DNA of 63,397 nucleotides, counting the filler, from Octopus bimaculoides (Eukaryota): NCBI RefSeq assembly GCF_001194135.2. It is 4 parts of 4 records of this genome, joined end to end, with 100 filler letters (N's around TTAATTAATTAA, not from the genome) between each part and the next. Parts side by side here need not be neighbours in the genome. Positions count along the whole stretch, not along the records: positions 29,968 to 55,219 come from NC_068988.1; 3 more parts are not named here. One strand, given 5' to 3'. The notes under the pieces are model-generated. The model was not told the origin of the DNA. It saw nothing but the letters and a program-made list of their open reading frames with translations, and made no database searches. Of this stretch, positions 34,955 to 55,219 are shown piece after piece (the first letter of the stretch is position 1; each line of letters starts with the position of its first letter). The position numbers and the translations under genes are program-made.

Positions 34955-35000
<46 letters not shown>

Positions 35001-35173
35001 GTATATATATATATATATATACATAAGTACATATATATGGTGAGAGATAGTAAGAGAGGCGGAAAGAGGGAGGGGGAAACTGACAGACAAAGCGAAGAAA
35101 GAGAGAAGCATATGAATATATCTTCTATATAAAACAAACAGAACAAACGGTTTATTCTTACATGCTTCAAAAG

Positions 35174-35179
35174 TTTATT
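35174..35179 (-). terminator. Polyadenylation signal of the galaxin-like gene
   Basis: AATAAA about 30 nt downstream of the TGA at 35210-35208. Confidence 0.55.
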
Positions 35180-35207
35180 TTTTCATATCAATTACCAATC
35201 AGTGAAA

Positions 35208-35731
35208 TCAGTGGTGATGATGATGACTTGTCTGCCACCATGGGAGAAGATTCGGTCGTGAATATACTTGTTTGTTGAAACAGTTGTTAGTACGCGTGTC
35301 GAAGATTGAAGTTCCACAACAAGCATACGTGTTTGGTATAAGATTACTTCCTGTTGGAAAAGTATCAGAAATTGTTTTTATAGCACCATTACAGCAAAGT
35401 TGCGTAGCCTTATTCATTCTAGCTGTACCGCAACAAACATCATATATTGATACTCTTGCCATGGCTGCTCCACCACAACATACATTATTCACTCTGGGAA
35501 GAGGTCCATTAATACAACACTCTTGAGTGGATATATCTATACCTACCGCATTGCAACATCCATTTACAGTTTGTGATTTAGCAATGAGTGCACCGCTGCA
35601 ACATACTTTAGCATCTCTGTCAAATACTGCATCTCCACAACAAGCAGGATACTTCAAACCAAGTGTAGAGCCTACTTGCGTACCGCAGCAAATGTTATTC
35701 TCACCATAGTACGGTTGGCCATTGCAATAAT
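35208..35731 (-). CDS. Terminal exon of a secreted di-cysteine-repeat (galaxin-like) protein, intact
   Basis: Phase-1 acceptor TTTTTAG at 35733-35732, 524 bp open frame: (x)YCNGQPYYGENNICC...NNCFNKQVYSRPNLLPWWQTSHHHHH*. Nine CC pairs plus two single Cys. Confidence 0.9.
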
Positions 35732-35919
35732 CTAAAAATGAATCAAATATTAAAAATCAATTTAATTTAAATATTGAATACAGATGACAATGCATGAATA
35801 CATATAAATTATCACTATTATTACACATGAATATAAAAAATATAGAATATACATGATTACAGACACATAAATATTTTAAAAAGTATTACTATTATAGACA
35901 CATTTTAGAGAGCGGTAAT

Positions 35920-36092
35920 TAGTGACTACATCGACCCCAGTGATTGAATTGTATGTATTTTATCGACACCGAAAGGATAAAAGAGAAAGTCGACCTTAAC
36001 AAAAAAGAATTTGAAACTAGATTGCATAAACTGAGGAAACGTCACTGAGCATTTTGACCGGCTTCCTAATGATTCTGCTAGAATGCTGCCTT
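35920..36092 (-). mobile_element. SINE (second octopus family), decayed
   Basis: Homologous to 54851-55050 and 62950-63112 (GTCGAC..CTTTCGG..GTCGATAAA). Confidence 0.65.
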
Positions 36093-36132
36093 TTTGAATA
36101 CAATACTGTCATTCATTAATATATGCGTATAT

Positions 36133-36174
<42 letters not shown>

Positions 36175-36194
36175 TTATATACACATATATATAA

Positions 36195-36355
36195 CTTGGC
36201 GTGGCTGTGTAGTAAGAAGCTTGTTTTCCAATAGCACAATTCCGGGTTTAGTCTCAGAACGTGGCGCCTTGGGGAAAATGTATCTTCTATAGCCTCGGGC
36301 TGGCCAAAACCTAGCGAGTGGATTTAGTACACGGAAACAGAAAGAAGCCTGTAGT
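36195..36355 (+). mobile_element. tRNA-derived SINE head
   Basis: GGCGTGGCTGTGTAGTAAGAAGCTTG..GGGTTTAGTCTC..GTGGATTT..GGAAAC. Confidence 0.75.
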
Positions 36356-36985
36356 ATATATATATATATATATGTATATANNNNNNNNNNNNNNNNNNNN
36401 NNNNNNNNNNNNNNNNNNNNNNNNNNNNNNNNNNNNNNNNNNNNNNNNNNNNNNNNNNNNNNNNNNNNNNNNNNNNNNNNNNNNNNNNNNNNNNNNNNNN
36501 NNNNNNNNNNNNNNNNNNNNNNNNNNNNNNNNNNNNNNNNNNNNNNNNNNNNNNNNNNNNNNNNNNNNNNNNNNNNNNNNNNNNNNNNNNNNNNNNNNNN
36601 NNNNNNNNNNNNNNNNNNNNNNNNNNNNNNNNNNNNNNNNNNNNNNNNNNNNNNNNNNNNNNNNNNNNNNNNNNNNNNNNNNNNNNNNNNNNNNNNNNNN
36701 NNNNNNNNNNNNNNNNNNNNNNNNNNNNNNNNNNNNNNNNNNNNNNNNNNNNNNNNNNNNNNNNNNNNNNNNNNNNNNNNNNNNNNNNNNNNNNNNNNNN
36801 NNNNNNNNNNNNNNNNNNNNNNNNNNNNNNNNNNNNNNNNNNNNNNNNNNNNNNNNNNNNNNNNNNNNNNNNNNNNNNNNNNNNNNNNNNNNNNNNNNNN
36901 NNNNNNNNNNNNNNNNNNNNNNNNNNNNNNNNNNNNNNNNNNNNNNNNNNNNNNNNNNNNNNNNNNNNNNNNNNNNNNNNNNNNN

Positions 36986-37026
<41 letters not shown>

Positions 37027-37166
37027 CATAAGGATATCGCTGTTCATCTATCGCCTACGTCGATTCCTCTGATGTGCTATTTTGCATTTATAATAAAAAG
37101 TATATATACAAATTATGAAAATATTTTTTTTAAATATACAGTATTATTTCTACTATATATAAATGG

Positions 37167-37208
<42 letters not shown>

Positions 37209-37619
37209 GTTTGACAGGAAGATATTGGGAGTAACTGCGAAGGTTTGGCTTCTTCGACCTCATGAGATGGGACGGTTAATAGTCTGATGATGGCGACTAA
37301 TTAGAAATCAAGAAATCACTGTCCACATTTTACGTGTAGAAAAATGAATAATCTACTATAAGGTATTGAGTAAACCATCAGTTTAGTGCAAAATTCTTCG
37401 TATATACAACACGCATAGAAAAGTATTATACACACATGTGTATATCTATGTCTCTCTCTCTCTATATATATATATATGTATATGTAAGAATGTGCATGTG
37501 TGTGTGTATGTATATATATGCACACACACACACACACATATATATCTATATATACGGATTTGACAGGATGAAATCGGGTGTGCCTTCGAAGTTTCCACTT
37601 GCTCGACAACATGAGACAC

Positions 37620-37790
37620 CAGTCTCATGACAGTGTGGCTTTTGGGGAAGAAGCTTGCTTCCCATCCACATGGTTCCAGGTTCGGTCCCACTGCGTAGCA
37701 CCTTGGGAAAACATCAACTATAGCCGCGGCCAACCAAAGCCTTGTGAGTGGATATGGTTGACAGAAACTTATAGAAGTCCGTTGGATATA
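37620..37790 (+). mobile_element. tRNA-derived SINE head
   Basis: AGAAGCTTGCTTCCCATCCACATGGTTCCAGGTTCGGTCCCACTGCG. Confidence 0.75.
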
Positions 37791-38139
37791 TGTGTGTGTG
37801 CTTGTGTCTGTGTGTCTGTGTGTATTGCGTGTGTGTGTGTGTGTGCGTGTGTGTAAGTAAATATATATAAATTTATCATCGGTTGCATATACATAGCCTA
37901 TGTGTTTTGTTCATACTCCAAATTTGCTGTAGACAGCGTCCAGAATAAGCTCCCTGCATGACGCCGAGTGTTAAGGAACATTTGAATATCACATACCAAG
38001 CGAGACGACAAGACCGAGATTGGTTGATACGGATATTCCTCCATTTTTTTTTTCGTATCCTGCAGCAAATTGAACGTATAAACAAAGCACATATACTAGA
38101 GTTGCTTCAAATTCTAAATTTAATATAGGTTTGTGTATA

Positions 38140-39290
38140 CTAGGTTGTCCAGAAAGTTCTGAGCGTTTTTAAGCTAATTCTTTTAATGCTTCGTTAAACA
38201 CACCTGAGACATAACACAAAACTTTGGCGCTGCTAGAAATGGTAGTGTATCTCTTCTGTGTTTTTTGACTAAAAATAGATTTATCTTTCTTTCCAATTAC
38301 CCTTCATTGACATTTGAAATGGATAACCAAAAATTTCATATTTGCGCTGTAATGCTTTTTTTTTTTAAAAAAAAAGGGAGTAAATGCTGCCAGGCCTTGC
38401 AAAATCATTTGAGATGCTGTATGTGAATCGACTACTACTGGTTTGCAAAATCTAAAGCTGGAGAGTTTAGCTTGGAAGATGACAATCGCAGTGGAAGACT
38501 GTTTTGTAGGCAAAAATTAAAGAAAACTCAAATATCACTAGAGAACTTGCAGAGGAGTTGGAAGTTTCTAAAAGTACGGCTCATGAACACCTCGTGAAGC
38601 TAGGATATATTTCTCGCTTTAATGCATGGGTCTCTCACAAACTCTGAGAAAAGTATTGCTTGGACCGGTATTCCGTTTGTGATATGCTTTTGAAACAAGC
38701 CTTTTTTTAAACAACTTGTGACTGGAGATGAAAAATGGATTGTGTACGTAAACGTAGAGTGAAAAAGATTCTGGGGTTTGTGTAAGGATCCCCCCAAAAC
38801 AGGAACCAAAGACGAATATCTGAGCCAAAAAGTTATGCCTTGCGTTTGGTGGGATCATAAAGGCATTATTTTGTCATGAATTTCTCCTACAAAACCAGAC
38901 CATTGGTTCTGATGGGTACTGTCGTCAGTTGGATAATTTGAAACAAGAATCAAAGAATTGAGGTCGGAGATTGCCAGTGTTCCAACAAGACGACGCCCGA
39001 CCACATGTGTCTTTGGGTACTTGAACAAAGTTATACGAACTTAGCTGGAATCTCTTACCCCATCCTCCATATTCCCCTGATATTGCCCCATCCGACTTCC
39101 ACTTGTTTTTGTCTCTACAGAAATCATTGCAAAGGAAAACATTTAATGTTGTAGACTGAGTCAAAATGCATCTAGATAACTTTTTTCTTCAAAACCAGTC
39201 AAATTTTATGCTAATGCAATATTTAAATTGTCCGATAGATAGGCAAAGATAATTAATAATAATGGAAATTATTTCATTGAATAAAATTTA
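38140..39290 (+). mobile_element. mariner (DD34D) element, near full length, decayed
   Basis: KQLVTGDEKWIVY, CVWWDHKGII, HPPYSPDIAPSDFHLF. Starts TA-CTAGGTTGTCCAGAAAGTT. Confidence 0.9.
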
Positions 39291-39420
39291 TTCAAAGATC
39301 AATATAGATAGAAAGATACATACATACATTAAATTATACTATGTGCAAATTATGTATATACATATATAGATACTTGCATATGCATATATATGTATACACA
39401 CACACACACACACACACACT

Positions 39421-39483
<63 letters not shown>

Positions 39484-39562
39484 AGCTTTAATAAAAGCAT
39501 ATTGAGCTACATTCGGTATTCGGGTATTATTTTTCCACTTTGTCTTGCATTTACGTTCTCTC

Positions 39563-39606
<44 letters not shown>

Positions 39607-39768
39607 NNNNNNNNNNNNNNNNNNNNNNNNNNNNNNNNNNNNNNNNNNNNNNNNNNNNNNNNNNNNNNNNNNNNNNNNNNNNNNNNNNNNNNNNNNNNNN
39701 NNNNNNNNNNNNNNNNNNNNNNNNNNNNNNNNNNNNNNNNNNNNNNNNNNNNNNNNNNNNNNNNNNNN

Positions 39769-39826
<58 letters not shown>

Positions 39827-39959
39827 ATATATAAGTTTATGAATTTGTGCTGCAAGATTCCTGGTGTCAAGCCGTGTGTTGAAACAGATATTGTAGTATT
39901 TTGGGATGGTCATTTCTTTTCCTTTTACCAAATAAACACATGCACTATATATTCGTTCT

Positions 39960-40345
39960 TCACTCATTTTTTAAATTGTTCTTATTCTAACTCATGCCCA
40001 TTGTCCGGAAATCTCTCCTCATACATCCGTAACCTCTTCAGTAACATTTTCCATCCTCGTGTACGCTCTTGGAACAAGAGCATACACGAGGACGGAAAGT
40101 ACGAATATATAGTGCATGTGTTTATTTTGAAAAAAAAAACAATGACCATATACAAGAATATGTATATATATAACATCAAAAAATACCTTAGGAATGAGAA
40201 CCCAGGTTCGAAATTTTCCCAAGACACCTGATGAAGATTGGAGGGTATATCAGCCGAAACGATGTGTTAACAACAAACAAGATGACAAATATCCGTCAAA
40301 TGTAAATAATGTAATGTACATAATTCCCCATCTCTTAAATATAGA
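39960..40345 (+). mobile_element. Non-autonomous hammerhead-bearing repeat with an internal long hairpin
   Basis: GACAC-CTGATGA (40228-40234)-AGATTG..CAGCC-GAAAC (40256-40260)-GAT-GTGTT. Hairpin at 40049-40097. Boundaries approximate. Confidence 0.7.
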
Positions 40346-40702
40346 ACTGTATTACTATTTACTTCTCTAAGGATTGTACTCGATAAATTACGAAAATAAC
40401 TCTGACAGATCAAATACTAAGAAATAAGTATACTCCATTTGATTTATACCAAATAATATAGGAAAATGATTAGGTTATTTCCCTTGTCTGTTAAAATAAA
40501 ATATAATAGTTATATATAAGAATCCTTACTAGGGGCTCTAATATCGTATTTTCAACAATCTGAGTATGCCATGAGGTTTCCAGACATGAGTTCTACTCAT
40601 GTGTCAAATTTCATCAAAATCGATAAAATGTTGTAGGAGGGGTTAGCTAACAACTCCGCAAACAAACACACCCACAGACAGAATTTCGCACCTATCTGGA
40701 AG

Positions 40703-40765
<63 letters not shown>

Positions 40766-40767
<2 letters not shown>

Positions 40768-42199
40768 GGGGTTGGACAAAATAATGGAAAAACCTAGCAT
40801 CATAACATCATAATTTTGAAATATCTATAAAACCGCCAAAAGCTTGTTTATTTCTATGTGTTTTTATTTTTTTGATTTATTATTAGTGTTGCTTAATATG
40901 TTTTGCTAAAATTGCTGCTTCGTTTCAGATATCATCAGAAAAAGGTATTTAAAATGGCAGATCTATTGGACTCTCAAACAGGTCAAATTGTTAGTGCTCG
41001 TATGGCAGGCGCTAGCGTAATGAAAAGAGCTGAAACGTTTGGTGTATAAAGAAGTACTGTCTCGAAAGTAATGACAGCCTTTGAGAAAGAGGGAAAAACT
41101 TCCTCGTCGAAACAAAACTCCGGAAGTAAACCAGAACTTTCAGATAGGGACCGTCGGACTCTTACGCGAATTTTTAGAAAGGATCACAAAAGTACAGCTC
41201 CCAAAATTACTGCACAGCTTAATGACTACCTCGGGAACGCAGTTTCCACGAAAACCGTTCGCCGGGAGCTGCACAAAGCCAGATTTCATTGGAGGGCTAC
41301 AATCAGAAAACCACTACTTTCAAAAACAAACGTTGCAAAGCGTTTAGAGTGAAGTAAAAACCTACAGAATGGGTGTCGGACGATTCATCCTTTACCTTNN
41401 NNNNNNNNNNNNNNNNNNNNNNNNNNNNNNNNNNNNNNNNNNNNNNNNNNNNNNNNNNNNNNNNNNNNNNNNNNNNNNNNNNNNNNNNNNNNNNNNNNNN
41501 NNNNNNNNNNNNNNNNNNNNNNNNNNNNNNNNNNNNNNNNNNNNNNNNNNNNNNNNNNNNNNNNNNNNNNNNNNNNNNNNNNNNNNNNNNNNNNNNNNNN
41601 NNNNNNNNNNNNNNNNNNNNNNNNNNNNNNNNNNNNNNNNNNNNNNNNNNNNNNNNNNNNNNNNNNNNNNNNNNNNNNNNNNNNNNNNNNNNNNNNNNNN
41701 NNNNNNNNNNNNNNNNNNNNNNNNNNNNNNNNNNNNNNNNNNNNNNNNNNNNNNNNNNNNNNNNNNNNNNNNNNNNNNNNNNNNNNNNNNNNNNNNNNNN
41801 NNNNNNNNNNNNNNNNNNNNNNNNNNNNNNNNNNNNNNNNNNNNNNNNNNNNNNNNNNNNNNNNNNNNNNNNNNNNNNNNNNNNNNNNNNNNNNNNNNNN
41901 NNNNNNNNNNNNNNNNNNNNNNNNNNNNNNNNNNNNNNNNNNNNNNNNNNNNNNNNNNNNNNNNNNNNNNNNNNNNNNNNNNNNNNNNNNNNNNNNNNNN
42001 NNNNNNNNNNNNNNNNNNNNNNNNNNNNNNNNNNNNNNNNNNNNNNNNNNNNNNNNNNNNNNNNNNNNNNNNNNNNNNNNNNNNNNNNNNNNNNNNNNNN
42101 NNNNNNNNNNNNNNNNNNNNNNNNNNNNNNNNNNNNNNNNNNNNNNNNNNNNATATTTGTTTGAAATTTTAACGTTTCCATTATTTTGTCCAACCCCTG
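40766..42199 (+). mobile_element. Tc1 element with both TIRs (centre in a gap)
   Basis: TIR (C/T)AGGGGTTGGACAAAATAATGGAAA at both ends with TA flanks. ORF 41071-41352 is a Tc1 HTH (LSDRDRRTL..VSTKTVRRELHK). Confidence 0.92.
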
Positions 42200-42218
42200 T
42201 ATATATATATATATATAT

Positions 42219-42396
42219 ATGTTTCTAGGTAAATTTCACCGCGGTAAATTCCACCACGGTATATTCCAGCATGGTAAATTCCACCCATGGACAGACTTCC
42301 AATATAAGCTGCTCCCGCTAATAATCACCGTGGTCAGTTTCTCTAGACCGTGGGTCAATACCTATGTTATTTCGTCGGTCTGTCTTTCATATCTTA

Positions 42397-42443
<47 letters not shown>

Positions 42444-42527
42444 TGAGAGAGAGAGAAAGAGTGAGAGAGAGAGAGAGAGNNNNNNNNNNAAAGAGTGAGA
42501 GAGAGAGAAAGAGTGAGAGAGAGAGAA

Positions 42528-42568
<41 letters not shown>

Positions 42569-43379
42569 GAGAGAGAGAAAATTATCTTTATATAATCTAC
42601 TTGAACTGAGATGGGATCACTTTAATGTACTCCCATCGCGTAAGAATCTATGAAAAGGGCTCATCAACAATATCAAAACTAATATAATCTGGGATAAAGA
42701 AAGATAAGATTAAATTTTAGCACACATAGGATAAAAATATAACAGCGAGTACATTGCGAAGCAGAGTTAGGATCAGAAAGTTTAATTTATTCCTTTAAGA
42801 AATTATTTTAAAATTTCTTAAGATAAATTGTGTGTACTATTTCTTAAAAATTGCGGAGGGTTTTCATTTTGATATTCCTGAACTAACTCCTTCAGCCGTG
42901 CATCAATAATTTGATAGGTCTTTTTTTTTTAGTCTCCACGTCGAATGTGTGCAATGTTTATGTGGCTTAATCCTTCCTCAGCTTTGAGGCCAGTGCATAG
43001 TTTCCACAAATTTGGATGTGTGGATGTTAGTGATGAGCGCAAATCATTGTGGAACCCTTCTAAAGAATTATTTGATCTTAGCAAGTCATTTAAGAAGCGA
43101 TCACGTACATTCCAGAGTTGTCTAAAATAATGTTGGGTTTCTCTTCACCGATGAGGACCGCACCACCTTATAATCCCAATGTATGTAATCTCAAAATAGG
43201 GGATAAACTCAGAAGGGATGTTTTCATCATCAGACAAATCTTCAAATACTTTGACAACGTCTTCAACGTATATTTGTATTCATTGACATTATTGATATTA
43301 TTTTTATGCATTTTTTTAATTTCCATAATATCGTAACCCATATAATAATAATAAAATATTAATAACAATAATAATAATA

Positions 43380-43424
<45 letters not shown>

Positions 43425-43506
43425 AATAATAATTTCACCTGTGGTGAAATTTACCTGGTGGAATTCCGTGGTGGAATTTACTGCGATGGAATTTACCGGT
43501 CACCAT
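42219..43506 (-). mobile_element. MULE/Mutator element, internally deleted, with repeat-built inverted termini
   Basis: Minus frame LWNVRDRFLNDLLRSNNSLEGFHNDLRSSLTSTHPNLWK matches the MULE C-terminal RTNN..EGWHN motif. Arrays of GGTAAATTCCACCAC at both ends in inverted orientation. Confidence 0.8.
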
Positions 43507-43699
43507 NNNNNNNNNNNNNNNNNNNNNNNNNNNNNNNNNNNNNNNNNNNNNNNNNNNNNNNNNNNNNNNNNNNNNNNNNNNNNNNNNNNNNNNNNNNNNN
43601 NNNNNNNNNNNNNNNNNNNNTATATATATACGTACACACACGTGTATATATATATGTGTGGTGGGTTGTTGAGCCTGATTTAGTTTCTCTTTCTAATCC

Positions 43700-44550
43700 A
43701 TTGTGTTGTGATGGTGGTGGTTATTTTTCTGCTGTTTTGGCCGTTTTACCGCATCTTTTAGAACATTGTTTCACTTGGTATAGCACATTTTTATGATATG
43801 TATTAGGATTCAAACCACCAGATGGACTTGCCCAACTTCTGTTCTTATTGCATAATCTTTGTATAAGTTGCTTGCTGGATAATTATGTAGAGATAACAAC
43901 ACTAGATCTTATACCTTGAAGAAAGTGGGGGAATTACTGGTTTCTGCTTCTTCTGTAGCTTTCGTTTGTTTATGTAGTTTGTAATATTTTTGTCGTCGTT
44001 GTTATTCTAGCTGTTGGTGTAAATGGAAGCCATGAAAAGATTTCTCGTAAGGCTCTTTCTGGATATATGCAGATGAATCTCTTATCTTTCCTCTCGATGT
44101 GAGCGTTCTGTTGATTTTTTAAAGAACTTTACGCGTAACATCAATGTTTGTTTTTTAGAGCTTCCGCTTTTCTTCTCTCCCATAAACTAGAATGCCTTAG
44201 AGTGGTTTGCTTCCCAACGTATCTAACTCTTTAGTATTTTCTGCGCTACTGTCACTCATATACGTTCGTTGTGTTGGAACTGGAAGTGTCTCATGATGTC
44301 CACTACGTCTGACACTCTAGCTTGGTCCTCTAGCTTCGAGTAGCTCGTCAGATACCAATATTTTCTCTCTCGACCCCGTTTCTTCAGGTTTGATGAAATA
44401 AGGATAAACTCGTTTGATAACCGTGTGATAGTAGCCACAGAAAAGTGTTCTCTCTTGCCCTCACAGACTGCATTGTCAATCTTATGTTTGTTGCATCTTG
44501 TTATATACCCTACTTTAAGCCTCACTTCCTGCAGCAATTATCTACTTCTG
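43700..44550 (-). mobile_element. Probable Ty3/gypsy integrase remnant
   Basis: Broken frames (KILVSD, FKV*DLVL..NYP, LNPNTY) resemble an integrase core and GPY/F region, by eye only. Confidence 0.4.
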
Positions 44551-44719
44551 CTGGAGCGGAGAGCTAGCTTTTTTTCCCTTTTATATTTATACACTTGTCG
44601 ACAATATCCTTTATTTAAGCTGGGAAAGTTGCTTTATAACTCAACAATAGGAGTTTTCATTTGTTTAATGACACATTAATTCATTTTAACATTTTTTTCG
44701 ATTGAGTTATTGTTTAATC

Positions 44720-46297
44720 CATTCACTGCAGGTTATCACAACAATCGAAGTTGTTTTCATTACTGAACATTTCGTTACTGAACATTCGTCATCACAGATA
44801 AACTACATGGTTTGGAATCGATGAAAAATACAACCACTGGTCAGAACTAGTTTGAATGTGTTGTCGATTGTGTGGAGAAAAGTGTCCTGTCATGGAATAG
44901 AATGGCATGCATTCCAGCAGATGGGGCCAGAGCATTTACCGGAAAAAATGCGGGTATGATGAAACTTTTAGAGAACAAGTTAAAAGCAGAACGGCCAGAC
45001 AGTGATATCTTGTCTTTTCATTGCATTTTGCAACAGGAAAACTTCTGTAAAGCTGCATTGGACCTAAAGGATGTGGTGGATCCTGTAGTGAGCGTAGGGA
45101 ACTCAGTCAGAGTAGGGACGCTCTATCATAGACAATTTAAATCTCTGCTTGATGATATGGATGCTGAGTATGGAGATGGGATTTACCACAACAGTATTCG
45201 GTGTTTAAGCATGTGGAAAGTGCTAAAACGTTTTTGGGAATTACAGAATGAAATCCTCCTCTTTCTGGACATGAAGGAGCTTACATGTGATTTTGTGACC
45301 AAAATGGGATGTATGGAGATATAAGATATATGGAGATATAAGATATATGGAGATGTATGAAGATATAAGATATATGGAGATGTATGGAGATATAAGATAT
45401 ATGGAGATGTATGGAGATATAAGATGATGTTTGTAACTGATATGTTTGAGAAATCAAATGTATTGAATATGACATTGTATAGAAATGGGTAGTTTCTACA
45501 TAAAATGTGAGATCATTCAAAACAAAACTAGGTCTAGTTGCAAGGCAAGCAGATAAGAGCAAGTTTTGTTATTTCCCTTTATTAAGAAAACAGAAAGTGC
45601 CTGCAAGTGTTTCTTCCAAGATTAGGGGTCATTTGCTGAGCTTGTAAGATGAAGTCACAAGAAATTTCAGGATTTTTAGAAAACTGAGCTTTGAATTTGC
45701 TATCTTATCGCTTCGCTGCTGATATTGATACAGCACCAGAGAAGATGCAGCTTGATCTAATTGACATGCAGTCAGATCACACGCTAAGGAAATGTTTGAT
45801 TCTGTGACATTGATAGGATTTTACAAATTTCTATCTACTGACAAATTTCCGTGTGTGAAGAAACTTGCTGGGGAAATATTTTCTATTTTTGAATCCACAT
45901 ACGTTTGTGAGCAAAGTTTTTCTTGCATGAAAATCAACAAGAGTAAAAATAGGTCTTCTGTGACTGACATAAACTTGCAGGCAGTGATGAGGATCTCAAC
46001 AAGCAACATCACTCCTGATTTCAAAAGAATTGTAAATAAGTGTGACAGGTTACATTTGTCGCATTAAATTACTTGTGCTGGCTGATGTGTAATTTGCACA
46101 TAAATAAATGTAATGAAACCTTTTCTGTGTACCACCATTACTTTAGTTTTATTTATTTATTATTATGTAATTTACACTTCATGTTAAATGAAATGTAATG
46201 TTAACTAATGAATATAATCAGTTATAGAAGGTGCGGTACTCCGCTAAACACGGCTCTCTTAAAGTAGCGTCTGAACCAGAATAATTGCTCATCCCTG
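44720..46297 (+). mobile_element. hAT (GTF2IRD2/SPIN-like) transposon 3' half with terminal repeat
   Basis: ORFs 44872-45324 (ADGARAFTGK..SFHCIL) and 45792-46067 (STYVCEQSFSCMKINKS, dimerisation domain). 3' TIR ..TTGCTCATCCCTG ends at 46297. Confidence 0.9.
45307..45425 (+). repeat. Minisatellite inside the hAT transposase
   Basis: Units ATGGAGATATAAGATAT (17 nt) interspersed with ATGGAGATGT (10 nt). Confidence 0.9.
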
Positions 46298-47599
46298 ATC
46301 TAAATGTAAGTTGAATAACCTAAAAGCCTAATGCGTCTCTCCACTCTACAAATTTTTTATAACTCTAGTAAGCAATATATGTATCTATAAAATACGTGTA
46401 TCTATAATATGCGCCTGTAGAATACCTTCCTGTTTAATTGTTGAAGCTGTTGTTAGTTCGATTACAATGTGCAATGTTTTCTATTTAAAAAGGTGTTAGT
46501 GATTTAAGTCGGATTTGCTGTCATTTATAGAGGGTTTGGCATACTATAATTTCTGATTCACAGAGTCGCTGTCTCTTATTTTAGCCTATTCCACCTCTAC
46601 TATCATTGTTCTTGCGCCCCAGAATTTATTGGTCTCGGGTCACCTCCACTCAAGCAGTCAAGACACAATAAAATCCTCTTTTCTATTTATCCATATTGTC
46701 TTAATAAATCATCCATCATTACACTATTTTATTCCCCCCAACAATTATAACCCTCTGGGACTGCCCATCAACACATCTATTTTCCATAACCGTCAGAATC
46801 GAACGCTAATCAAGTCGACATCGCTTGTCTCGGAAATGGTGCAATGCTCATGGGCGTAATATGTTCCTGAACAGGTTTCTCTAGAAATACATTAATATGT
46901 CTCATTTTAAGACGGTATGCTGTAATTTGAGGGAGGAAGATTTAGCCTTTATTTCTAGCAAGTTAATCAAACAGATCTTCGTCTGAAAGAAACTTGGCAT
47001 TGGAAGAATTTTCATACAGAATATTGAATTAATGGGATAAAGTCTATATGTAACTGTTCATTTTAAATACATACAAGAATATGGTATATTTATATTAAAT
47101 TTTTAAACTATTACAAATTTTCGCGAAAAGAGCTGCATGAAATAAATATATATTTCGTAGGCAATTATACACTCGCAGCCAATTATACACTCGCCTAGCA
47201 GGTTCATAGTTTGAGAATTAAGGATTTCGTCCATAGGTTAACTAACCATCTCTCAGAATATTACCATAGAGTTAATAGCTATATTTTTTACTCGACATTT
47301 CGCTGAACTGAACACGCTTCGCCTGAAATGACGACATAAAAATGAGGCCATTGCTGGTTTTCAAATCTACCAATAAGTTACGGAATGCTTTTTGTTCATT
47401 TCTATAGCCAAGTCTTACAAAGAATGATTACAATACTTGATATCCAGTTTCTGAGAGATATGACTAAAATTAAAATCGGGGTCATCACGGCATGAAAGCC
47501 TTTGAATGTTTTCTGATATTAACCTTGTTTAATGACTATACAAAAGAAGCGTATATATTTTGTGCAAAGCAAAATTGAACAGAAAAAACATGTCTTTAC

Positions 47600-47971
47600 A
47601 TTCTTTTTCTTTTATTCTTTTACTTGTTTCGGCCATTTGACTGCGGCCATGCTGGAGCACCGCCTTTAGTCGAATCAAATCGACCCCAGGACTTATTCTT
47701 TGTAAGCCTAGTACTTATTCTATCGGTCGCTTTTTGCCAAACCGCTAAGTTACGGGGACCTAAACACACCAGCATCGGTTGTCAAGCGATGGTGGGGGGA
47801 CAAACACAGATACACAACATATACACACATACATATATATATACGTATATACGACGGGCTTCTTTCAGTTTCCGTCTACCAAATCCACTCACAAGACTTT
47901 GGTCGGCCCGAGGCTACAGTAGAAGACACTTGCCCAAGATGCCACGCAGTGGGACTGAACCCGGAACCATG
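47600..47971 (-). mobile_element. tRNA-derived SINE, CpG-intact, lacking its 5' A-box end
   Basis: Same family as 7607-7990. Joined to the pseudo-exon at CATGGT. Confidence 0.85.
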
Positions 47972-48435
47972 TTACCCAACTCTGTCGTAGATACACACGT
48001 CCAAAGTAACAGAAGTGTGTATATGTTTCGAACATTAAAGATACACAGCAAGCAAATATGTGCGGTATGTTATTATTTCTCCCCAGAATATGCGTTACAG
48101 TGCCCTAACAACAAAGAGACTTCGTGCTATACATTGTGACCGTCCCAATATAGTTTCCCTGAGAATTGGTGCTGTACCACAGTATGCATGCGTCGTTTGC
48201 ATAATCGGAGCGCCGTTACAACAATCGCTAACTGATGTATCTATCGATTCCGCGCTGCAACAGCCGTTCGTTGCAGTTGTTCTTGGAAGTAATGCACCTG
48301 CGCAACAAAATTTCGCCTCGCTATCAAATTCTACATTTCCACAGCAAGCAGGGCATTTAAAGCCATTTATCGGTGAAAGTTGTGAATTGCAGCAAATGTC
48401 ACTGAAAATGTTATACAGTTAGTGATTTAAAATAT
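47966..48435 (-). pseudogene. Pseudogenised paralogous terminal exon of the galaxin-like gene
   Basis: Same phase-1 acceptor (TTTAG at 48437-48436). Collinear with 35731-35208 (ICC..PACCG..FD..AK.CC.GAL..NGCC..ID.S..CC). TAA at 48421-48419, frameshift near 48155, TAG at 48107-48105, 3' end lost. Confidence 0.88.
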
Positions 48436-48661
48436 CTAAATGCAAAAATAAAAGAATAGAATAGAATATTGATTTTGGTTAGATTTAATAATGACAAAGG
48501 AATACTGATAATGGTAGGAGTCATTCATGCATTCATGCTCAAGCGCACATTCACACAAACACACACACATACACACGCGTACAAAATCACATACATACTC
48601 ATATGTATATTATATGTGCGTATGTGTGGGTATATGTTTGTGTGTCTGTCTGTCTGAGTAT

Positions 48662-48696
<35 letters not shown>

Positions 48697-49052
48697 TGTG
48701 TAACTCGAACAAAAATTACAGAGACGATGTTTTTGCATAACTTTTTTCAAGCATACAATCATTCCGAGGAACAATTTCATCACTATACACAGTTTTGAAC
48801 ATATAAATGTAATCTCATAGAATTAATCAATCAATTAAGGAAACACATTGCCCTCCATCAGACTGACGAGAAAAGTGAAAGGTAAACTGCAAATTAATTA
48901 ATTAGTTAATTATTGAATGGATGTAAATAAATTTACTTGTACAAGTCAATGTGCATATGGACGAAATAATTTCTCACGTCTTTCGAAATGATCGCAAAGT
49001 TGAATAAAGTTATATAACATCACTATTTTTCGTCTGATTTTTGCTATAGACT

Positions 49053-49290
49053 ATGATAAATGCACCAGCCAATGCGAACATGAACTGCAAAAGTAGAAAT
49101 CTAATCTACTGCATCAAATGCCCTAATTGTGAAGAATTGTACGTTGGCCAGACAGGTAATGCACTATCGGAACGCTCACAGGTACATCGACAACAGATTA
49201 AAAACCCAGAAGTCCGCCAAATACCACTGAGTAACCATCTAGCAACATGTGGTCATCAAACTTTTATTATATTTCCATTCCATAAACTTT
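49053..49290 (+). mobile_element. PLE GIY-YIG endonuclease fragment
   Basis: NCKSRNLIYCIKCPNCEELYVGQTG..ERSQVHRQQI. Confidence 0.85.
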
Positions 49291-49935
49291 ATTGTTTATA
49301 TATATNNNNNNNNNNNNNNNNNNNNNNNNNNNNNNNNNNNNNNNNNNNNNNNNNNNNNNNNNNNNNNNNNNNNNNNNNNNNNNNNNNNNNNNNNNNNNNN
49401 NNNNNNNNNNNNNNNNNNNNNNNNNNNNNNNNNNNNNNNNNNNNNNNNNNNNNNNNNNNNNNNNNNNNNNNNNNNNNNNNNNNNNNNNNNNNNNNNNNNN
49501 NNNNNNNNNNNNNNNNNNNNNNNNNNNNNNNNNNNNNNNNNNNNNNNNNNNNNNNNNNNNNNNNNNNNNNNNNNNNNNNNNNNNNNNNNNNNNNNNNNNN
49601 NNNNNNNNNNNNNNNNNNNNNNNNNNNNNNNNNNNNNNNNNNNNNNNNNNNNNNNNNNNNNNNNNNNNNNNNNNNNNNNNNNNNNNNNNNNNNNNNNNNN
49701 NNNNNNNNNNNNNNNNNNNNNNNNNNNNNNNNNNNNNNNNNNNNNNNNNNNNNNNNNNNNNNNNNNNNNNNNNNNNNNNNNNNNNNNNNNNNNNNNNNNN
49801 NNNNNNNNNNNNNNNNNNNNNNNNNNNNNNNNNNNNNNNNNNNNNNNNNNNNNNNNNNNNNNNNNNNNNNNNNNNNNNNNNNNNNNNNNNNNNNNNNNNN
49901 NNNNNNNNNNNNNNNNNNNNNNNNNNNNNNNNNNN

Positions 49936-49996
<61 letters not shown>

Positions 49997-50779
49997 TACC
50001 GAGCAAAAGTCTTCGGCCACTTTAAACTATTGTAAATTTCTAATTTTCAACTTATAATTAGATATTGCACATTGCGTTTTTACAGATGAAACATTGGTCC
50101 TGTTGGAGTCATTTCCATACCTAATCCTTACATTTTGTAGTAGGGGTTCTGAATGAGAGGAGAATATGCGAAACGACACCAAAAATGGCCGTGCAAAAGT
50201 TTTCGGTCATCTCACATAATCCAAACAATATACAGTGTTTTAAAAGAGAAAAATGTCTATAATAGAAATTATTACATAATGTTCATTTCAAGAATTTACT
50301 GTACATTGCTAATATTTCGTGTTGCTTCTCTTAGCTTGCATAATTGCTTCAATGTGCCTGAGGAGAGATGCGTACTAATTATTTACCACATTCACAGGTA
50401 TGAGACGCGATTCTTTGTGGCTGAGCTCCCACAACTCTTCAAGATTGTGTAGATTCTTCTGATGAACTTTTTCTGTTTAGTTCTGTCCACATTTACTCGA
50501 TGATATAAAAGCGCTGGGCAGTGATCTGTATAAATACAAACTTGTTATCAGTTCAATATGTTTGACACATATCCGAACCCATAAGAAAGCCTGTTTGGTT
50601 AAGAATCACTGCTAACTGAACTGGTGTGTTTACACCAATCTATCTACAGTGACAGATTTTCTCCATGACAAAATGCAGTGAATTATTTTCTCACGGCTTC
50701 GAATATTTATAAAGCCAAGATGTAAAGATAACAAAAGACAAAGACAGGTGAGTGAACAAGCAAGTGTATTAGTTTGACG

Positions 50780-51480
50780 CTTGGGACGAAAGGAAATGTT
50801 TTTGGCGTTTCGAATTTATTTCGAACTTCATGCAATAAAATTCTTAAATAATACAGTCCTCCTGCTTTTTGTGTGACGACATAAATACAACCAAGTGTTT
50901 CCTCTTTGAAAACGTTCAAATGGCCTTCAATATTTTTCCTCGCTTTCTTCTCTGCCATTCTTTGTTACTGCTGTTCCAAATGAAATACATGGATAATTCA
51001 GCATAAAGTAATATATTTGCAAAGTCATTATTCATGCATAAAAAAAAAAGAATTCTGTCAATGTTTTTCTCATATGACGTTCTTTGACAGTCATATATAT
51101 CCTCATTATTTCTGAGCAATAATCTTTGTATATCTGGTATATGAACTTGCAGTTTGACTATTGCAGGTATTCTTTCATGAAATCAACATCCTGAAATGAA
51201 TGCAACTGCTTCGGATGGTCCAATATACCTACTCATTGGGTATTAACTAATTTCATTATCATTGTTTATTTGAACAGCAGCTTGGTCATTTCTTGTCAAC
51301 GTGTACTTGCTTAATTGACCTCACTGAGGCAACGATTTCAACGCTGCAAATGGCATTTGAATGCTCTTTAAAGAGTTTCATTATAAGGTACAACCGATTT
51401 GTTGTTTGTTTTTCCATTCCTATGAGATTCAAATCCTCCCATTGTAACTGATCTTGGTCTATGAAGAGATAGTCCCTCTG
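50780..51480 (-). mobile_element. Helitron RepHel fragment
   Basis: LFFLCMNNDFANILLYAEL..WQRRKRG and TLGCIYVV..YYLRILLHEV. Confidence 0.8.
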
Positions 51481-51857
51481 CCTTTTTTTCTGCCTTTTTT
51501 TCTACCTTTTGATTAAGATGATAATAATTAATATTTTATTTTAAATATAATAACACTTTACCCCTTTAAAGAAAAAAAATTAAGTACCGCGGATCCCAAA
51601 AATATCTCATAGAATATAGGGCAAATTTCTATCTTGCAGTCCACAGCATTCCGAAACTTGTATAAATTATTAACAGAAAAAAAAAGCAAAGTAAGAAAAA
51701 AGGACGGACGGCGGTAGCTGCGATGACACTTTGATGTATACCTCCGCAAATCAACATTTTCAACTTGATTCTTTTTACTTAGATGGGGGGGGGGAAATGA
51801 CTATTTTATTTGTAATCTTTATCATCTTAATCAAGCGGCAAGAAAGCAAACTTTGAG

Positions 51858-51906
<49 letters not shown>

Positions 51907-51922
51907 TACATACATACATACA

Positions 51923-51954
<32 letters not shown>

Positions 51955-52474
51955 CATATGATACAAAATATTCTACTTTCTTACTTTATTACTCTAATAT
52001 ACATTTATATTGAGTAAGCTAACATGATCTTAGTACGCATATATGCAAATAGCTGACACTAATCAGTTAATTTGCACTGGCACCAAATATACACACTAAC
52101 TTTCACAGTACTCTACATTCTCACCATAAACAACTGTAACTATAAATTTATCGTACGCATAAGATGCAAACGCGTGAAGACTGAGTGTTTATCCATATTT
52201 AAACAGAAAACAAAAAATAACAAAAATAAAAAGTCTCCAATAGTATTACAACTGCATATTTCCAAACGTACAAATGCATCAACGTATCGACAAAACATCA
52301 ATACAATTTAACATGAACGGCCATATATAAATTCAGATAGTCAGGATAAGGATAAAGAGAACGGGAAAGGTTAATTAAAATTTAACAGCATGTGCCAGTT
52401 GCAAGGACATTGTGGTGCTGTTTGTTTCCTATAGCGCGATTTCTTCTAGTGTGTATCTTAGTATACACACAAAC

Positions 52475-52526
<52 letters not shown>

Positions 52527-53278
52527 TTGATTTATGGTTGATTCATATATATATTAGCAAATGCAAATATGATAACAGACACCCTGAATAAGTTAAAAAC
52601 TTAGAACGTCATTGAACCTAGCAAACTACCGAAATGCAATTTCTTTTTACTTTTTTTTTTCTACCCTCTCATAACATTTGTAATAACTTTGGCAGCAGTA
52701 TGCGCATTTTAATTTCTTCAGCAATGAAAATTGTCGTCTAACATTCGATTTCCAATCTATAACCTAATTCAAATTAGGCTTACAACCACATTTCATGCTA
52801 CTTCTGATCAGCAATTTTCTATATGGGATTTGACAAAATATGAACCTATTTCCAATACTCTTTATAGCCGAGAGTTGTATTTTTATAAAAATGTACTCAC
52901 ATAATATCTACCTATCAGGGCATAAATAAATTCAGTTGCTTATTTTACCATTTGTTTTTCTCGCAATAAAACGCCAGCGACTTTAAGGTGGAAAAAGTGT
53001 ATCCATCTTACCTTACATTCCAAATGATACTTATGTGATATTCAAAGTGAAATAACGATTTCTATGATTTGAATTTTACTTAATGTTACTCTATATAAAA
53101 CCGTGGATCTTAGTACAATTCACTTTAAACTCGATAGAAGCATATCGATATTGAATCTCGATATACTTGTAACTTTGAAAATGTATAAGACCTACAAACT
53201 AACTTTTTTTCTTTTTCGTTTGTTATATACTCTAAAAAAAGGAACAAAATCATATATAGAATTGTAAAAACTTCTTAC

Positions 53279-53381
53279 AAGTTGGGTGGTGAGGTTGATG
53301 ATAATATGACCAATGCAGGGCAGTTGTTGATCCAATGACTGCAAGCAGAGCAGAGGCAATGATGATTACAATGTTGGACAT
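53279..53381 (-). CDS. Signal-peptide first exon of the galaxin-like gene
   Basis: MSNIVIIIASALLAVIGSTTA/LHWSYYHQPHHPT plus 1 nt, donor GTAAGA at 53278. Phase 1 matches both downstream terminal exons. Confidence 0.8.
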
Positions 53382-53437
53382 GACGTTCCCTATTTTCTTC
53401 TCGAATCCAAGTTCACTTTGATATGCAGCGAAAAGCA

Positions 53438-53445
53438 TTTATATA
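53438..53445 (-). promoter_or_regulatory. TATA box
   Basis: TATATAAA about 60 nt upstream of the ATG at 53381. Confidence 0.6.
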
Positions 53446-53694
53446 TCTTCCTAAAAATTAAAACGTAGGACTAGGTAAACTAAAGTTCCCAGATTTTTAC
53501 TTGCATATCTTGTTCACGATTTAATGCATGAGAATATTTCACGGATGTGCTGTAGAAAAAAACAAAGAATGCATTCATTAAATAATAAAATCCAGCATAG
53601 ATAGGAAAAATTTAGAAGTAAAATACACTCTGAATGGTGTGAAGTGTAATTATGATGCAATGCCTTTTGATGTCATTGTCATTAGTAGCGATTT

Positions 53695-53746
53695 TGTTGT
53701 TATTATTTTTATTATTGTTATTATTATTATAATTATTATTATAATA

Positions 53747-53777
<31 letters not shown>

Positions 53778-53806
53778 TTATTATTATTATTATCATCATT
53801 ATTATT

Positions 53807-53851
<45 letters not shown>

Positions 53852-53858
53852 GTCATCA

Positions 53859-53902
<44 letters not shown>

Positions 53903-53905
53903 GTT
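53695..53905. repeat. Compound (ATT)n(ATC)n(ATT)n microsatellite
   Basis: Read directly from the sequence. Confidence 0.95.
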
Positions 53906-53929
53906 CAGTAGTTTTATTTTTATAACGTG

Positions 53930-55050: not shown

Positions 55051-55057
55051 AGTAAGG

Positions 55058-55153
<96 letters not shown>

Positions 55154-55157
55154 GTCA

Positions 55158-55219
<62 letters not shown>

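What the first reader, a model, noticed from the sequence alone, without database searches (positions are those of the whole stretch)
35208..53445. Unannotated-looking two-exon secreted galaxin-like protein assembled across 18 kb of repeats
Seen: joining 53381-53279 to 35731-35208 gives a 627-nt frame (208 aa). It has a 21-aa signal peptide and 20 Cys, with five modules in which Cys positions are separated by exactly 11 residues (NGQPYYGENNI, GDAVFDRDAKV, NAVGIDISTQE, GTARMNKATQL, GTSIFDTRTNN). A TATA box and AATAAA are present. Established: di-Cys repeats define coral skeletal galaxins and the usherin-like repeat, and a galaxin in the squid Euprymna scolopes is linked to symbiont selection and antimicrobial activity. 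Inference: a shell-less octopus keeps a small, fast-evolving galaxin cluster for matrix, mucus or microbial-control functions. This is the strongest candidate for a new system here.
Basis: partly seen in the sequence, partly recalled or inferred. Interest (0 to 1): 0.75.

Follow-up and report, generated by a model that had tools for sequence, protein, structure and literature searches.

The report
Already-annotated octopus galaxin gene

Summary
Joining 53381-53279 to 35731-35208 (minus strand) gives 627 nt, 208 aa and 20 Cys, with GT/AG splice sites and matching phase. All six assembly gaps lie in the intron.

The product is 100% identical over its full length to XP_014767985.1 "galaxin [Octopus bimaculoides]" (UniProt A0A0L8HZV2). 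The piece is base-for-base chromosome CM046608.1 of GCA_001194135.2. It matches Pfam Galaxin_repeat at E=1.8e-19. "Unannotated-looking" is therefore wrong and "galaxin-like" is right.

What I added:
- **Dead exon copy.** The 17.5-kb intron carries a decayed copy of exon 2 at about 48435-47975, with two stops, a 13-nt frameshift and lost Cys codons, among transposon relics.
- **Tandem cluster.** The gene sits next to galaxin-2, and O. sinensis has a matching cluster with introns of about 13-33 kb.
- **Selection pattern.** Whole-exon dN/dS is about 1 against the nearest relatives. Yet all 20 Cys are invariant and there are no indels, so a fixed scaffold carries rapidly changing loops.
- **Predicted fold.** AlphaFold2 models a confident rod of stacked β-hairpins with no match in the PDB.

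Function is untested. A secreted protein acting at an epithelial or microbial surface is the best guess, but net charge is only +2.4, far below the squid antimicrobial galaxins.

The parts
53438..53445 (-). TATA box (TATATAAA). Its last A begins an upstream in-frame ATG at 53438-53436.
   Evidence: ATATATAAATG is invariant in all eight signal exons of the O. bimaculoides and O. sinensis clusters. The 57 nt between it and the ATG at 53381 vary 10/10/5 at codon positions 1/2/3, which is not a coding signature, so they are probably 5'UTR.
53279..53381 (-). Coding exon 1: Met1 to the first base of codon 35. It encodes the leader MSNIVIIIASALLAVIGSTTA plus a His/Tyr/Pro-rich linker.
   Evidence: Kyte-Doolittle hydropathy is above 2 for windows 1-11, with T at -3 and A at -1 before Leu22. 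Codon-position variation of 9/5/13 is a coding signature. The GTAAG donor at 53278-53274 is conserved in 7 of 8 copies.
35732..53278 (-). Intron of 17,547 bases containing six assembly gaps, transposon relics and the decayed exon.
   Evidence: Transposon relics: Tc1/mariner HTH at 41071-41352(+), hAT dimerisation domain at 45792-46067(+), GIY-YIG at 49053-49304(+). SINE-like copies lie at 47800-47972, 37668-37834 and 36240-36377. No second signal exon was found in the readable sequence.
47975..48435 (-). Decayed duplicate of the repeat exon (pseudo-exon). It is most like exon D1 of the O. sinensis galaxin-2-like gene.
   Evidence: The tttag|AT acceptor is kept. Lesions: first Cys codon changed to TTA; CAA to TAA stop at 48421-48419; TGC to TAC; 13-nt deletion at about 48148/48147; 12-nt deletion; TAG stop at 48107-48105; 3' end replaced by a SINE-like element near 47975. 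The TAA stop and the TAC change are shared with the partial copy in the galaxin-2 intron.
35208..35731 (-). Coding exon 2. It encodes the whole mature repeat region (all 20 Cys), a PWW motif and a C-terminal His5 tail, and ends with the TGA stop at 35210-35208.
   Evidence: All 20 Cys columns are invariant and there are no indels before the C-terminal tail in six intact copies from two species. AlphaFold2 pLDDT is about 77-95 for the 10-residue blocks covering residues 31-190, with stacked β-hairpins.
35151..35179 (-). Two AATAAA polyadenylation signals (35179-35174 and 35156-35151), 29-52 nt after the stop codon.
   Evidence: Read directly from the sequence. Their use is inferred.

Best explanation
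This is the already-annotated Octopus bimaculoides gene 'galaxin' (XP_014767985.1), on chromosome CM046608.1 at about 40.61-40.63 Mb.

Shown:
- A TATA-box promoter drives a short first exon encoding a hydrophobic leader.
- The frame continues across a 17.5-kb transposon-filled intron into one large exon encoding the whole mature protein.
- The mature protein has nine Cys-Cys pairs with alternating 11- and 13/14-residue spacers, and is modelled as a rod of stacked β-hairpins.
- The gene is one unit of a head-to-tail cluster that evolves by birth and death. A dead copy of the mature exon sits in its own intron, and the neighbour is galaxin-2.
- The Cys scaffold and the length are frozen, while the residues between change at or above the synonymous rate.

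Inferred:
- The leader is cleaved after Ala21 and the protein is secreted.
- The Cys-Cys pairs form disulfides that staple neighbouring hairpins.
- The variable loops form a binding surface that acts outside the cell, most likely on microbes or on surface or matrix polymers at an epithelium. Its squid relatives EsGal1-3 are expressed in bacteria-facing epithelia, and their repeat peptides inhibit bacteria.
- Direct membrane killing by a cationic mechanism is less likely here than for the squid proteins.
For: - **Identity.** The product is 100% identical over 100% of its length to XP_014767985.1 and A0A0L8HZV2. The locus has the same 18,174-base span, and 25,252 of 25,252 bases match, gaps included.
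- **Family.** Pfam PF24748 gives E=1.8e-19. A profile search finds 866 relatives at E<=0.001, including Nematostella and sea-urchin proteins.
- **Gene structure.** GT/AG sites and phase fit. The same signal-exon, long-intron, repeat-exon layout occurs in four O. sinensis transcripts in gap-poor sequence.
- **Start codon.** The promoter and the inner ATG are conserved, and only the region after 53381 shows a coding signature.
- **Constraint.** All 20 Cys are kept while 50% of non-Cys residues differ from galaxin-2. At that rate the chance of keeping 19 Cys is 2e-6 (about 1e-6 for all 20). There are no indels or stops, unlike the decayed copy.
- **Rapid change.** dN/dS is 0.98-1.07 against galaxin-2, os_A and os_B. 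It is 1.21 for the galaxin-2/os_B orthologue pair, where the exon region is 82.9% identical against 84-86% for the flanking intron. It is 3.2 for os_A/os_B (Fisher p=0.004).
- **Fold.** Mean pLDDT is 80.9, with block means of about 77-95 over residues 31-190 and 22 short strands.
- **Squid relatives.** Ten EsGal genes are specific to symbiotic-organ epithelia, and EsGal1 and EsGal2 repeat peptides inhibit bacteria (PMC12773714).
Against: - I had no transcript evidence, so the exon 1 to exon 2 junction rests on prediction, on conservation of layout and on selection on exon 2.
- The decayed exon keeps a good acceptor only 4.8 kb from the donor and could capture splicing.
- About 1.6 kb of N between the decayed exon and exon 2 could hide a private signal exon.
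- Mature net charge is +2.4 at pH 7.4 (pI 8.1), against +5 to +21.5 reported for the squid galaxins. That weakens a classical cationic antimicrobial mechanism.
- dN/dS for this gene itself is not significantly above 1 (p about 0.3-0.6).
- No clear O. sinensis orthologue was found in the fetched region.
- No dedicated signal-peptide predictor was available.
Confidence: 0.85

Rival explanations
1. It is a structural extracellular-matrix protein. It would be built into a hard or chitinous tissue such as the beak, radula, sucker lining, stylet or egg case, as coral galaxins are built into the skeletal organic matrix, and would not act on microbes.
For: - Galaxins were first defined as coral skeletal matrix proteins, and the di-Cys pattern was proposed to support a macromolecular framework (PMC3748352).
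- The mature protein is nearly uncharged and is modelled as a rigid disulfide-rich rod.
- The linker after the leader (HWSYYHQPHHPTYY) and the C-terminal His run are rich in His, Tyr and Pro in all octopus paralogues. From my own memory, not tested here, that composition recalls cephalopod beak and sucker-ring proteins.
Against: - Loop residues turn over at or above the neutral rate, with repeated duplication and loss. That is more typical of proteins that face other organisms, although shell-matrix proteins also evolve fast.
- The only cephalopod galaxins with experimental data are expressed in soft, bacteria-facing epithelia.
- There are no acidic or mineral-binding stretches.
Confidence: 0.3
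2. The join is wrong or incomplete. Exon 1 originally belonged to the now-dead exon at 48.4 kb. The live exon at 35731 would then be served by its own signal exon hidden in an assembly gap, and the 208-aa model would be a chimera of two neighbouring tandem units.
For: - The dead exon lies directly downstream of exon 1 and keeps its acceptor.
- Gaps of 605 and 754 N between it and exon 2 are large enough to hide a signal exon of about 300 nt.
- In the neighbouring locus, NCBI's galaxin-2 isoform X1 appears to join the signal exon of one unit to the repeat exon of another, across 67 kb in a cluster region where about a third of the bases are N.
Against: - In gap-poor O. sinensis, gene D has exactly this layout of one signal exon, D1, then D2, and no signal exon lies between D1 and D2.
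- Nothing resembling a signal exon or its promoter occurs in the readable 10.6 kb between 47949 and 35731.
- The identical 208-aa model is on record both as an NCBI RefSeq protein and as a UniProt entry.
- Even if this rival is true, the mature protein is unchanged, because all 20 Cys lie in exon 2.
Confidence: 0.15
3. It is a non-functional relic. Whole-exon dN/dS of about 1 would mean the gene drifts neutrally, like the decayed copy in its intron.
For: dN/dS is 0.98-1.07 against the three nearest relatives. A dead copy lies nearby. The protein's 90%-identity cluster has one member on one contig, so no second source holds this sequence.
Against: - A 174-codon frame stays open with no indel.
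- All 20 Cys and 31 further columns are invariant across six copies, while half of the other residues have changed (chance about 1e-6).
- The truly dead copy shows what neutral decay looks like here: stops, a frameshift and lost Cys.
- The promoter, start context and donor site are conserved.
Confidence: 0.04

Closest known systems
Octopus bimaculoides galaxin, XP_014767985.1 / UniProt A0A0L8HZV2
   Same: It is the same protein: 208 of 208 residues match, at the same locus and with the same gene span.
   Different: Nothing differs. The database entry is a computed prediction with no experimental characterisation that I could find.
Octopus galaxin-2 group: O. bimaculoides XP_014786332.2, and O. 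sinensis galaxin-like and galaxin-2-like (P0002-P0005, P0009)
   Same: - The architecture matches: signal exon, long intron, one repeat exon.
- The 20-Cys framework is identical, with no indels.
- All share the PWW motif, and all but P0004 end in a His-rich tail.
- They are tandem neighbours on the same chromosome.
   Different: - Identity is only 49-57%.
- This copy has the longest His-rich linker among the O. bimaculoides copies.
- It lacks the Lys at position 3 of the leader.
- No clear O. sinensis orthologue was found: about 73% nucleotide identity, against 81-90% for orthologous segments.
Euprymna scolopes galaxins EsGal1-10 (PMC12773714; Heath-Heckman et al. 2014 as cited there)
   Same: They are cephalopod galaxin-family proteins with tandem di-Cys repeats and a multi-gene family. 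AlphaFold2 predicts β-rich repeat folds for them too.
   Different: - The squid proteins are strongly cationic (+5 to +21.5), while this one is +2.4.
- Squid expression (light organ, accessory nidamental gland) and the antibacterial activity of repeat peptides are measured. Nothing is measured for the octopus protein.
- Octopus has neither of those organs.
- No non-octopus relative exceeds 32% identity.
Coral skeletal galaxins (Galaxea fascicularis galaxin; Acropora millepora galaxin and galaxin-2)
   Same: [quoted passage not shown]
   Different: - Coral galaxins are recovered from the aragonite skeleton's organic matrix, and the octopus has no such skeleton.
- Sequence relatedness is limited to the repeat scaffold.
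- The octopus proteins are shorter (about 190 aa mature) and carry His/Tyr-rich ends.

Membership tests
Galaxin family (Pfam PF24748 Galaxin_repeat) | A match to the family profile above the curated threshold. | tested here: met
   70.4 bits against a gathering score of 28, E=1.8e-19, in two stretches, the best covering residues 35-109.
Galaxin family (Pfam PF24748 Galaxin_repeat) | Tandem repeats marked by regularly spaced Cys-Cys pairs. About nine double-Cys motifs are conserved in coral and cnidarian galaxins (PMC3748352). | tested here: met
   There are nine CC pairs plus two single terminal Cys. Spacers alternate between 11 and 13/14 residues, with one spacer of 23. All are invariant in six octopus copies.
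Galaxin family (Pfam PF24748 Galaxin_repeat) | An N-terminal secretory signal peptide. | tested here: met
   This rests on heuristics, since no dedicated predictor was available. Hydropathy is above 2 over the first 11 windows, with T at -3 and A at -1 before Leu22. The IGSTTA motif is conserved in paralogues and the region has a coding signature. AlphaFold2 models a low-confidence helix at residues 4-15.
Galaxin family (Pfam PF24748 Galaxin_repeat) | Homology to galaxin-like proteins of other phyla. | tested here: met
   The profile search found 866 representative proteins at E<=0.001 and 317 at E<=1e-10. Those that carry names come from Nematostella vectensis and Diadema sea urchins.
Coral skeletal-matrix galaxin (in the narrow sense) | The protein is physically occluded in a biomineral organic matrix. 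| not testable with these tools
   This needs proteomics of octopus hard tissues. The family background is in PMC3748352.
Squid EsGal-type antimicrobial galaxin | A strongly cationic mature protein. +5 to +21.5 is reported for EsGal1-10. | tested here: not met
   Net charge is +2.4 at pH 7.4 and pI is 8.07 for the mature protein. The octopus paralogues range from +2.4 to +5.1, against the values quoted in PMC12773714.
Squid EsGal-type antimicrobial galaxin | Expression in bacteria-facing epithelia and growth inhibition of bacteria by the protein or its repeat peptides. | not testable with these tools
   No expression or assay data for the octopus protein were found.

The most novel reading that the evidence does not exclude
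The octopus galaxin cluster may work as a cassette system. One promoter and signal exon would be spliced to any of several downstream terminal exons, each encoding a complete mature galaxin whose loops are under diversifying selection.

Two observations fit this. O. sinensis gene D is annotated with two such alternative exons, D1 and D2. The window's gene has the same layout, except that its first cassette is dead and its acceptor is still intact.

If true, this would be an exon-choice route to diversifying a secreted, possibly microbe-facing protein in a mollusc. It would also mean the two named O. bimaculoides galaxins are recent octopus-specific duplicates (57% identical to each other, at most 32% to anything else), not ancient lineages that predate the squid-octopus split as suggested in PMC12773714.
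Probability: 0.15. Interest if true: 0.45.

Novelty: already known. Interest (0 to 1): 0.15.

Why it matters
As a discovery it matters little. The gene, its name and its family are already in RefSeq and UniProt, and the two O. bimaculoides galaxins have been used in a published phylogeny.

The check does yield a few useful details for anyone studying cephalopod galaxins:
- A dead duplicate exon with a live-looking acceptor sits in the intron.
- Several NCBI models in the cluster probably carry a false 19-residue N-terminal extension or fuse neighbouring units across gaps.
- The family shows a frozen 20-Cys scaffold with loops changing at or above the neutral rate. This is significantly above neutral for one O. 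sinensis pair.
- The octopus copies form one tight, young clade.

These points make the idea of a rapidly evolving surface on a rigid scaffold testable, in an animal that lacks the squid's symbiotic organs.

Tried and rejected
- **Second signal exon or promoter.** I searched the piece with eight signal-exon queries using blastn at word size 7. Only the known one at 53560-53230 was found.
- **Solved structures.** A profile search of PDB sequences gave no hit at E<=1. Foldseek against the PDB gave nothing below E=2; the top hits were weak matches to the reovirus sigma1 β-spiral with TM about 0.09.
- **Literature by accession.** A full-text search for the accession numbers returned 0 papers. Heath-Heckman et al. 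2014 (PMC4224630) is not held. The PNAS 2025 supplements are not held, so I could not confirm which accessions their 'octopus galaxin-1/-2' refer to.
- **O. sinensis orthologue.** None was found in the 120 kb I fetched. The best segments are about 73% identical, against 81-90% for true orthologous segments. The region further upstream could not be fetched.
- **Positive selection on this gene.** It was not demonstrated. Pairwise dN was not significantly above dS (p=0.23-0.59).
- **Uninformative scans.** The bacterial-type promoter and terminator scan and the tRNA scan do not apply to an animal gene or found nothing.
- **Word-indexed homologue search.** It reached only eight proteins, six of them named Octopus proteins. 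The exhaustive profile search was needed to see the wider family.
- **Upstream ATG at 53438 as the true start.** Rejected as unlikely. It lies inside the invariant TATA box, and the 57 nt after it show no coding signature.

Full report
**1. What is in the sequence**

On the minus strand, 53381-53279 (103 nt) opens with ATG and ends at ACTT|GTAAG. A second exon follows the acceptor tcatttttag| at 35731 and runs to the TGA at 35210-35208. Joined, they give 627 nt and 208 residues with 20 Cys.

Exon 1 ends one base into a codon and exon 2 supplies the other two, so the phases fit. The Cys spacing is C-11-CC-14-CC-11-CC-13-CC-11-CC-11-CC-13-CC-11-CC-23-CC-11-C. That is nine CC pairs and six 11-residue spacers.

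TATATAAA sits at 53445-53438. AATAAA occurs twice, 29-52 nt after the stop codon.

**2. The gaps**

The piece consists of 13 ungapped blocks. Exon 1 lies in block 49936-54095 and exon 2 in block 34955-36380. No reading frame crosses a gap.

What does depend on the gaps is the linkage of the two exons across six scaffold joins. The piece is identical, base for base and gap for gap, to GCA_001194135.2 chromosome CM046608.1 (25,252 of 25,252 positions). The chromosome-scale assembly therefore adds no independent evidence.

Independent support comes from Octopus sinensis. A 119,860-base stretch there contains only 100 N and holds four galaxin transcripts. Each has the same layout of signal exon, long intron and a single repeat exon, with introns of 14.6 and 17.9 kb for genes A and B and 12.7 and 33.1 kb for the two terminal exons of gene D.

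**3. It is already annotated**

The 208-aa product is 100% identical over 100% of its length to XP_014767985.1 'galaxin [Octopus bimaculoides]' and to UniProt A0A0L8HZV2 'Galaxin-like repeats domain-containing protein'. The annotated gene span of 18,174 bases is exactly 53381-35208.

[quoted passage not shown] So 'unannotated-looking' and 'candidate for a new system' do not hold.

**4. Family**

Pfam Galaxin_repeat (PF24748) matches at 70.4 bits against a threshold of 28, E=1.8e-19. A word-indexed search found only octopus proteins plus two unnamed sequences.

An exhaustive profile search found 866 representative proteins at E<=0.001. Most are longer multi-repeat proteins. The few that carry names come from Nematostella and Diadema sea urchins.

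All octopus members are 46-67% identical to one another, and nothing else exceeds 32%. They form one tight, octopus-specific clade. This is hard to reconcile with the suggestion in PMC12773714 that the two O. bimaculoides galaxins represent lineages that split before squids and octopuses diverged. I could not check which accessions that paper used.

**5.

At 48435 to about 47975 on the minus strand there is a copy of the repeat exon behind an intact acceptor (ttctattcttttatttttgcatttag|AT). It is decayed in these ways:
- The first Cys codon has become TTA.
- CAA has become a TAA stop at 48421-48419.
- One TGC has become TAC.
- A 13-nt deletion near 48148/48147 shifts the frame.
- A further 12-nt deletion follows.
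- There is a TAG stop at 48107-48105.
- The 3' end is replaced by a SINE-like element.

The copy is most similar to exon D1 of O. sinensis 'galaxin-2-like'. That gene is annotated as one signal exon spliced alternatively to D1 (isoform X1, P0009) or to the next repeat exon D2 (isoform X2, P0004). The window's gene has the same layout with the first cassette dead.

A partial copy in the galaxin-2 intron shares the TAA stop and the TAC change. The dead exon was therefore either duplicated along with the gene or converted.

The rest of the intron holds transposon relics and three SINE-like copies:
- Tc1/mariner HTH at 41071-41352
- hAT dimerisation domain at 45792-46067
- GIY-YIG at 49053-49304

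No second signal exon is present in the readable sequence. Gaps of 605 and 754 N could still hide one.

**6. The cluster**

In O. bimaculoides, in gene orientation, the order is:
- this gene
- 15.5 kb of spacer
- a signal exon orthologous to O. sinensis gene A
- a long, gap-ridden stretch
- the signal exon, partial dead exon and repeat exon of galaxin-2, which is orthologous to O. sinensis gene B at 81-90% non-coding identity
- the signal exon of a third gene, orthologous to O. sinensis gene D

About a third of this region is N. NCBI's 'galaxin-2 isoform X1' joins the A-type signal exon to the B-type repeat exon across 67 kb and is probably a fusion of two units.

The window's gene matches O. 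sinensis sequence at only about 73%. Its orthologue is therefore either outside the fetched region or lost.

**7. Start codon and promoter**

ATATATAAATG is invariant in all eight signal exons. The ATG inside it is in frame and is used as the start in several NCBI models.

The 57 nt that follow vary 10/10/5 at codon positions 1/2/3, which is no coding signature. The next 63 nt vary 9/5/13, which is a coding signature. This supports the start at 53381 and a 5'UTR of about 30 nt.

The leader MSNIVIIIASALLAVIGSTTA is strongly hydrophobic and has T at -3 and A at -1. Cleavage after residue 21 is plausible, but no dedicated predictor was available.

**8. Selection**

I aligned six intact repeat exons from the two species. 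All 20 Cys columns and 31 other columns are invariant, and there is no indel before the C-terminal tail.

| Comparison | dN/dS | Note |
|---|---|---|
| this gene vs galaxin-2 | 1.04 | dS about 0.30 |
| this gene vs os_A | 1.07 | |
| this gene vs os_B | 0.98 | |
| galaxin-2 vs os_B (orthologues) | 1.21 | dS 0.18; exon region 82.9% identical vs 84-86% for flanking intron |
| os_A vs os_B | 3.2 | Fisher p=0.004 |

But half of the non-Cys residues differ between this gene and galaxin-2. At that rate the chance of keeping 19 Cys is 2e-6, or about 1e-6 for all 20. The dead copy shows what real neutrality does here.

The best reading is a frozen scaffold with loops changing at or above the neutral rate. 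Positive selection on this particular gene is not demonstrated.

**9. Structure**

AlphaFold2, run with an eight-sequence alignment, gives mean pLDDT 80.9. Block means are about 77-95 for residues 31-190. The model has 22 four-residue strands forming successive β-hairpins, and a low-confidence leader and tail.

There is no relative in the PDB by sequence or by fold. PMC12773714 reports similar β-rich AlphaFold models for the squid galaxins.

**10. Function**

Nothing is measured for the octopus protein. Squid EsGal genes are expressed in epithelia that face bacteria, and peptides from EsGal1 and EsGal2 repeats inhibit bacteria.

The octopus protein shares the family, the secretory leader, the multi-copy cluster and the fast-changing loops. 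That fits a protein meeting other organisms or variable ligands at a surface. Its net charge, however, is +2.4, against +5 to +21.5 for the squid proteins. Cationic membrane attack is therefore less likely than binding.

A structural-matrix role, as in corals, remains a serious rival. The His/Tyr/Pro-rich linker and the His tail point that way.

**11. Verdict**

The gene is known, named and in the literature. The extra findings here are the dead cassette exon, probable mis-annotations in the cluster, the scaffold-versus-loop selection pattern and the youth of the octopus clade. They are useful details and not a new system.

Noticed in passing
window 48435-47975 (-): A decayed duplicate of the galaxin repeat exon lies inside the intron. 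It keeps a strong acceptor 4.8 kb from the donor. It is orthologous in type to the intact alternative terminal exon D1 of an O. sinensis gene. Why splicing would skip it is unexplained.
   Followed up: partly
window 53438-53382 (-), and the corresponding regions of L002-L005: An upstream in-frame ATG sits inside the invariant TATA box, and the 57 nt after it show no coding signature (10/10/5 variable sites at codon positions 1/2/3). The 19-20-residue N-terminal extensions in NCBI models P0002, P0003, P0004 and P0009 are probably 5'UTR read as protein.
   Followed up: yes
L002 10001-77249 (O. bimaculoides galaxin-2 locus, outside the window): 'Galaxin-2 isoform X1' joins a signal exon orthologous to O. 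sinensis gene A to the repeat exon orthologous to gene B, across 67 kb of heavily gapped sequence. It is likely two tandem genes fused by the annotation. P0006 (144 aa, on a 1,162-bp unplaced contig, 93% identical to galaxin-2) may be the missing exon or a haplotype copy.
   Followed up: partly
window 41071-41352 (+), 45792-46067 (+), 49053-49304 (+): Transposon relics in the intron: a Tc1/mariner-type transposase HTH, a hAT C-terminal dimerisation domain, and a GIY-YIG domain that runs into a gap.
   Followed up: yes
window 47800-47972, 37668-37834, 36240-36377: A SINE-like element of about 170 nt is present three times in the piece, with 7 blastn matches at E<=1e-10 in the O. bimaculoides cluster and 11 in the O. 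sinensis cluster. One copy truncates the 3' end of the decayed exon.
   Followed up: partly
window 53639-53911 and 54992-55219; edges of most gaps (for example 32900-33100, 36300-37050, 39540-39830, 49940-50000): There are long trinucleotide (ATT/ATC-type) runs and TG/CA and TA/TG microsatellites. Most assembly gaps are flanked by such simple repeats, which is probably why the assembly broke there.
   Followed up: no
proteins P0001-P0005, P0009 (residues 22-36 and 199-208 of P0001): The octopus galaxins share a variable His/Tyr/Pro-rich linker after the leader and a PWW motif. All but P0004 also end in a His-rich C-terminal tail (His5 in P0001, up to 10 His in 18 residues in P0005). This suggests metal binding or cross-linking, but it was not tested.
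   Followed up: no
P0001 vs P0002 and all other relatives: The two named O. bimaculoides galaxins are 57% identical and are tandem neighbours, while every non-octopus relative is at most 32% identical. This conflicts with the published reading (PMC12773714) that they belong to lineages that split before the squid-octopus divergence.
   Followed up: partly
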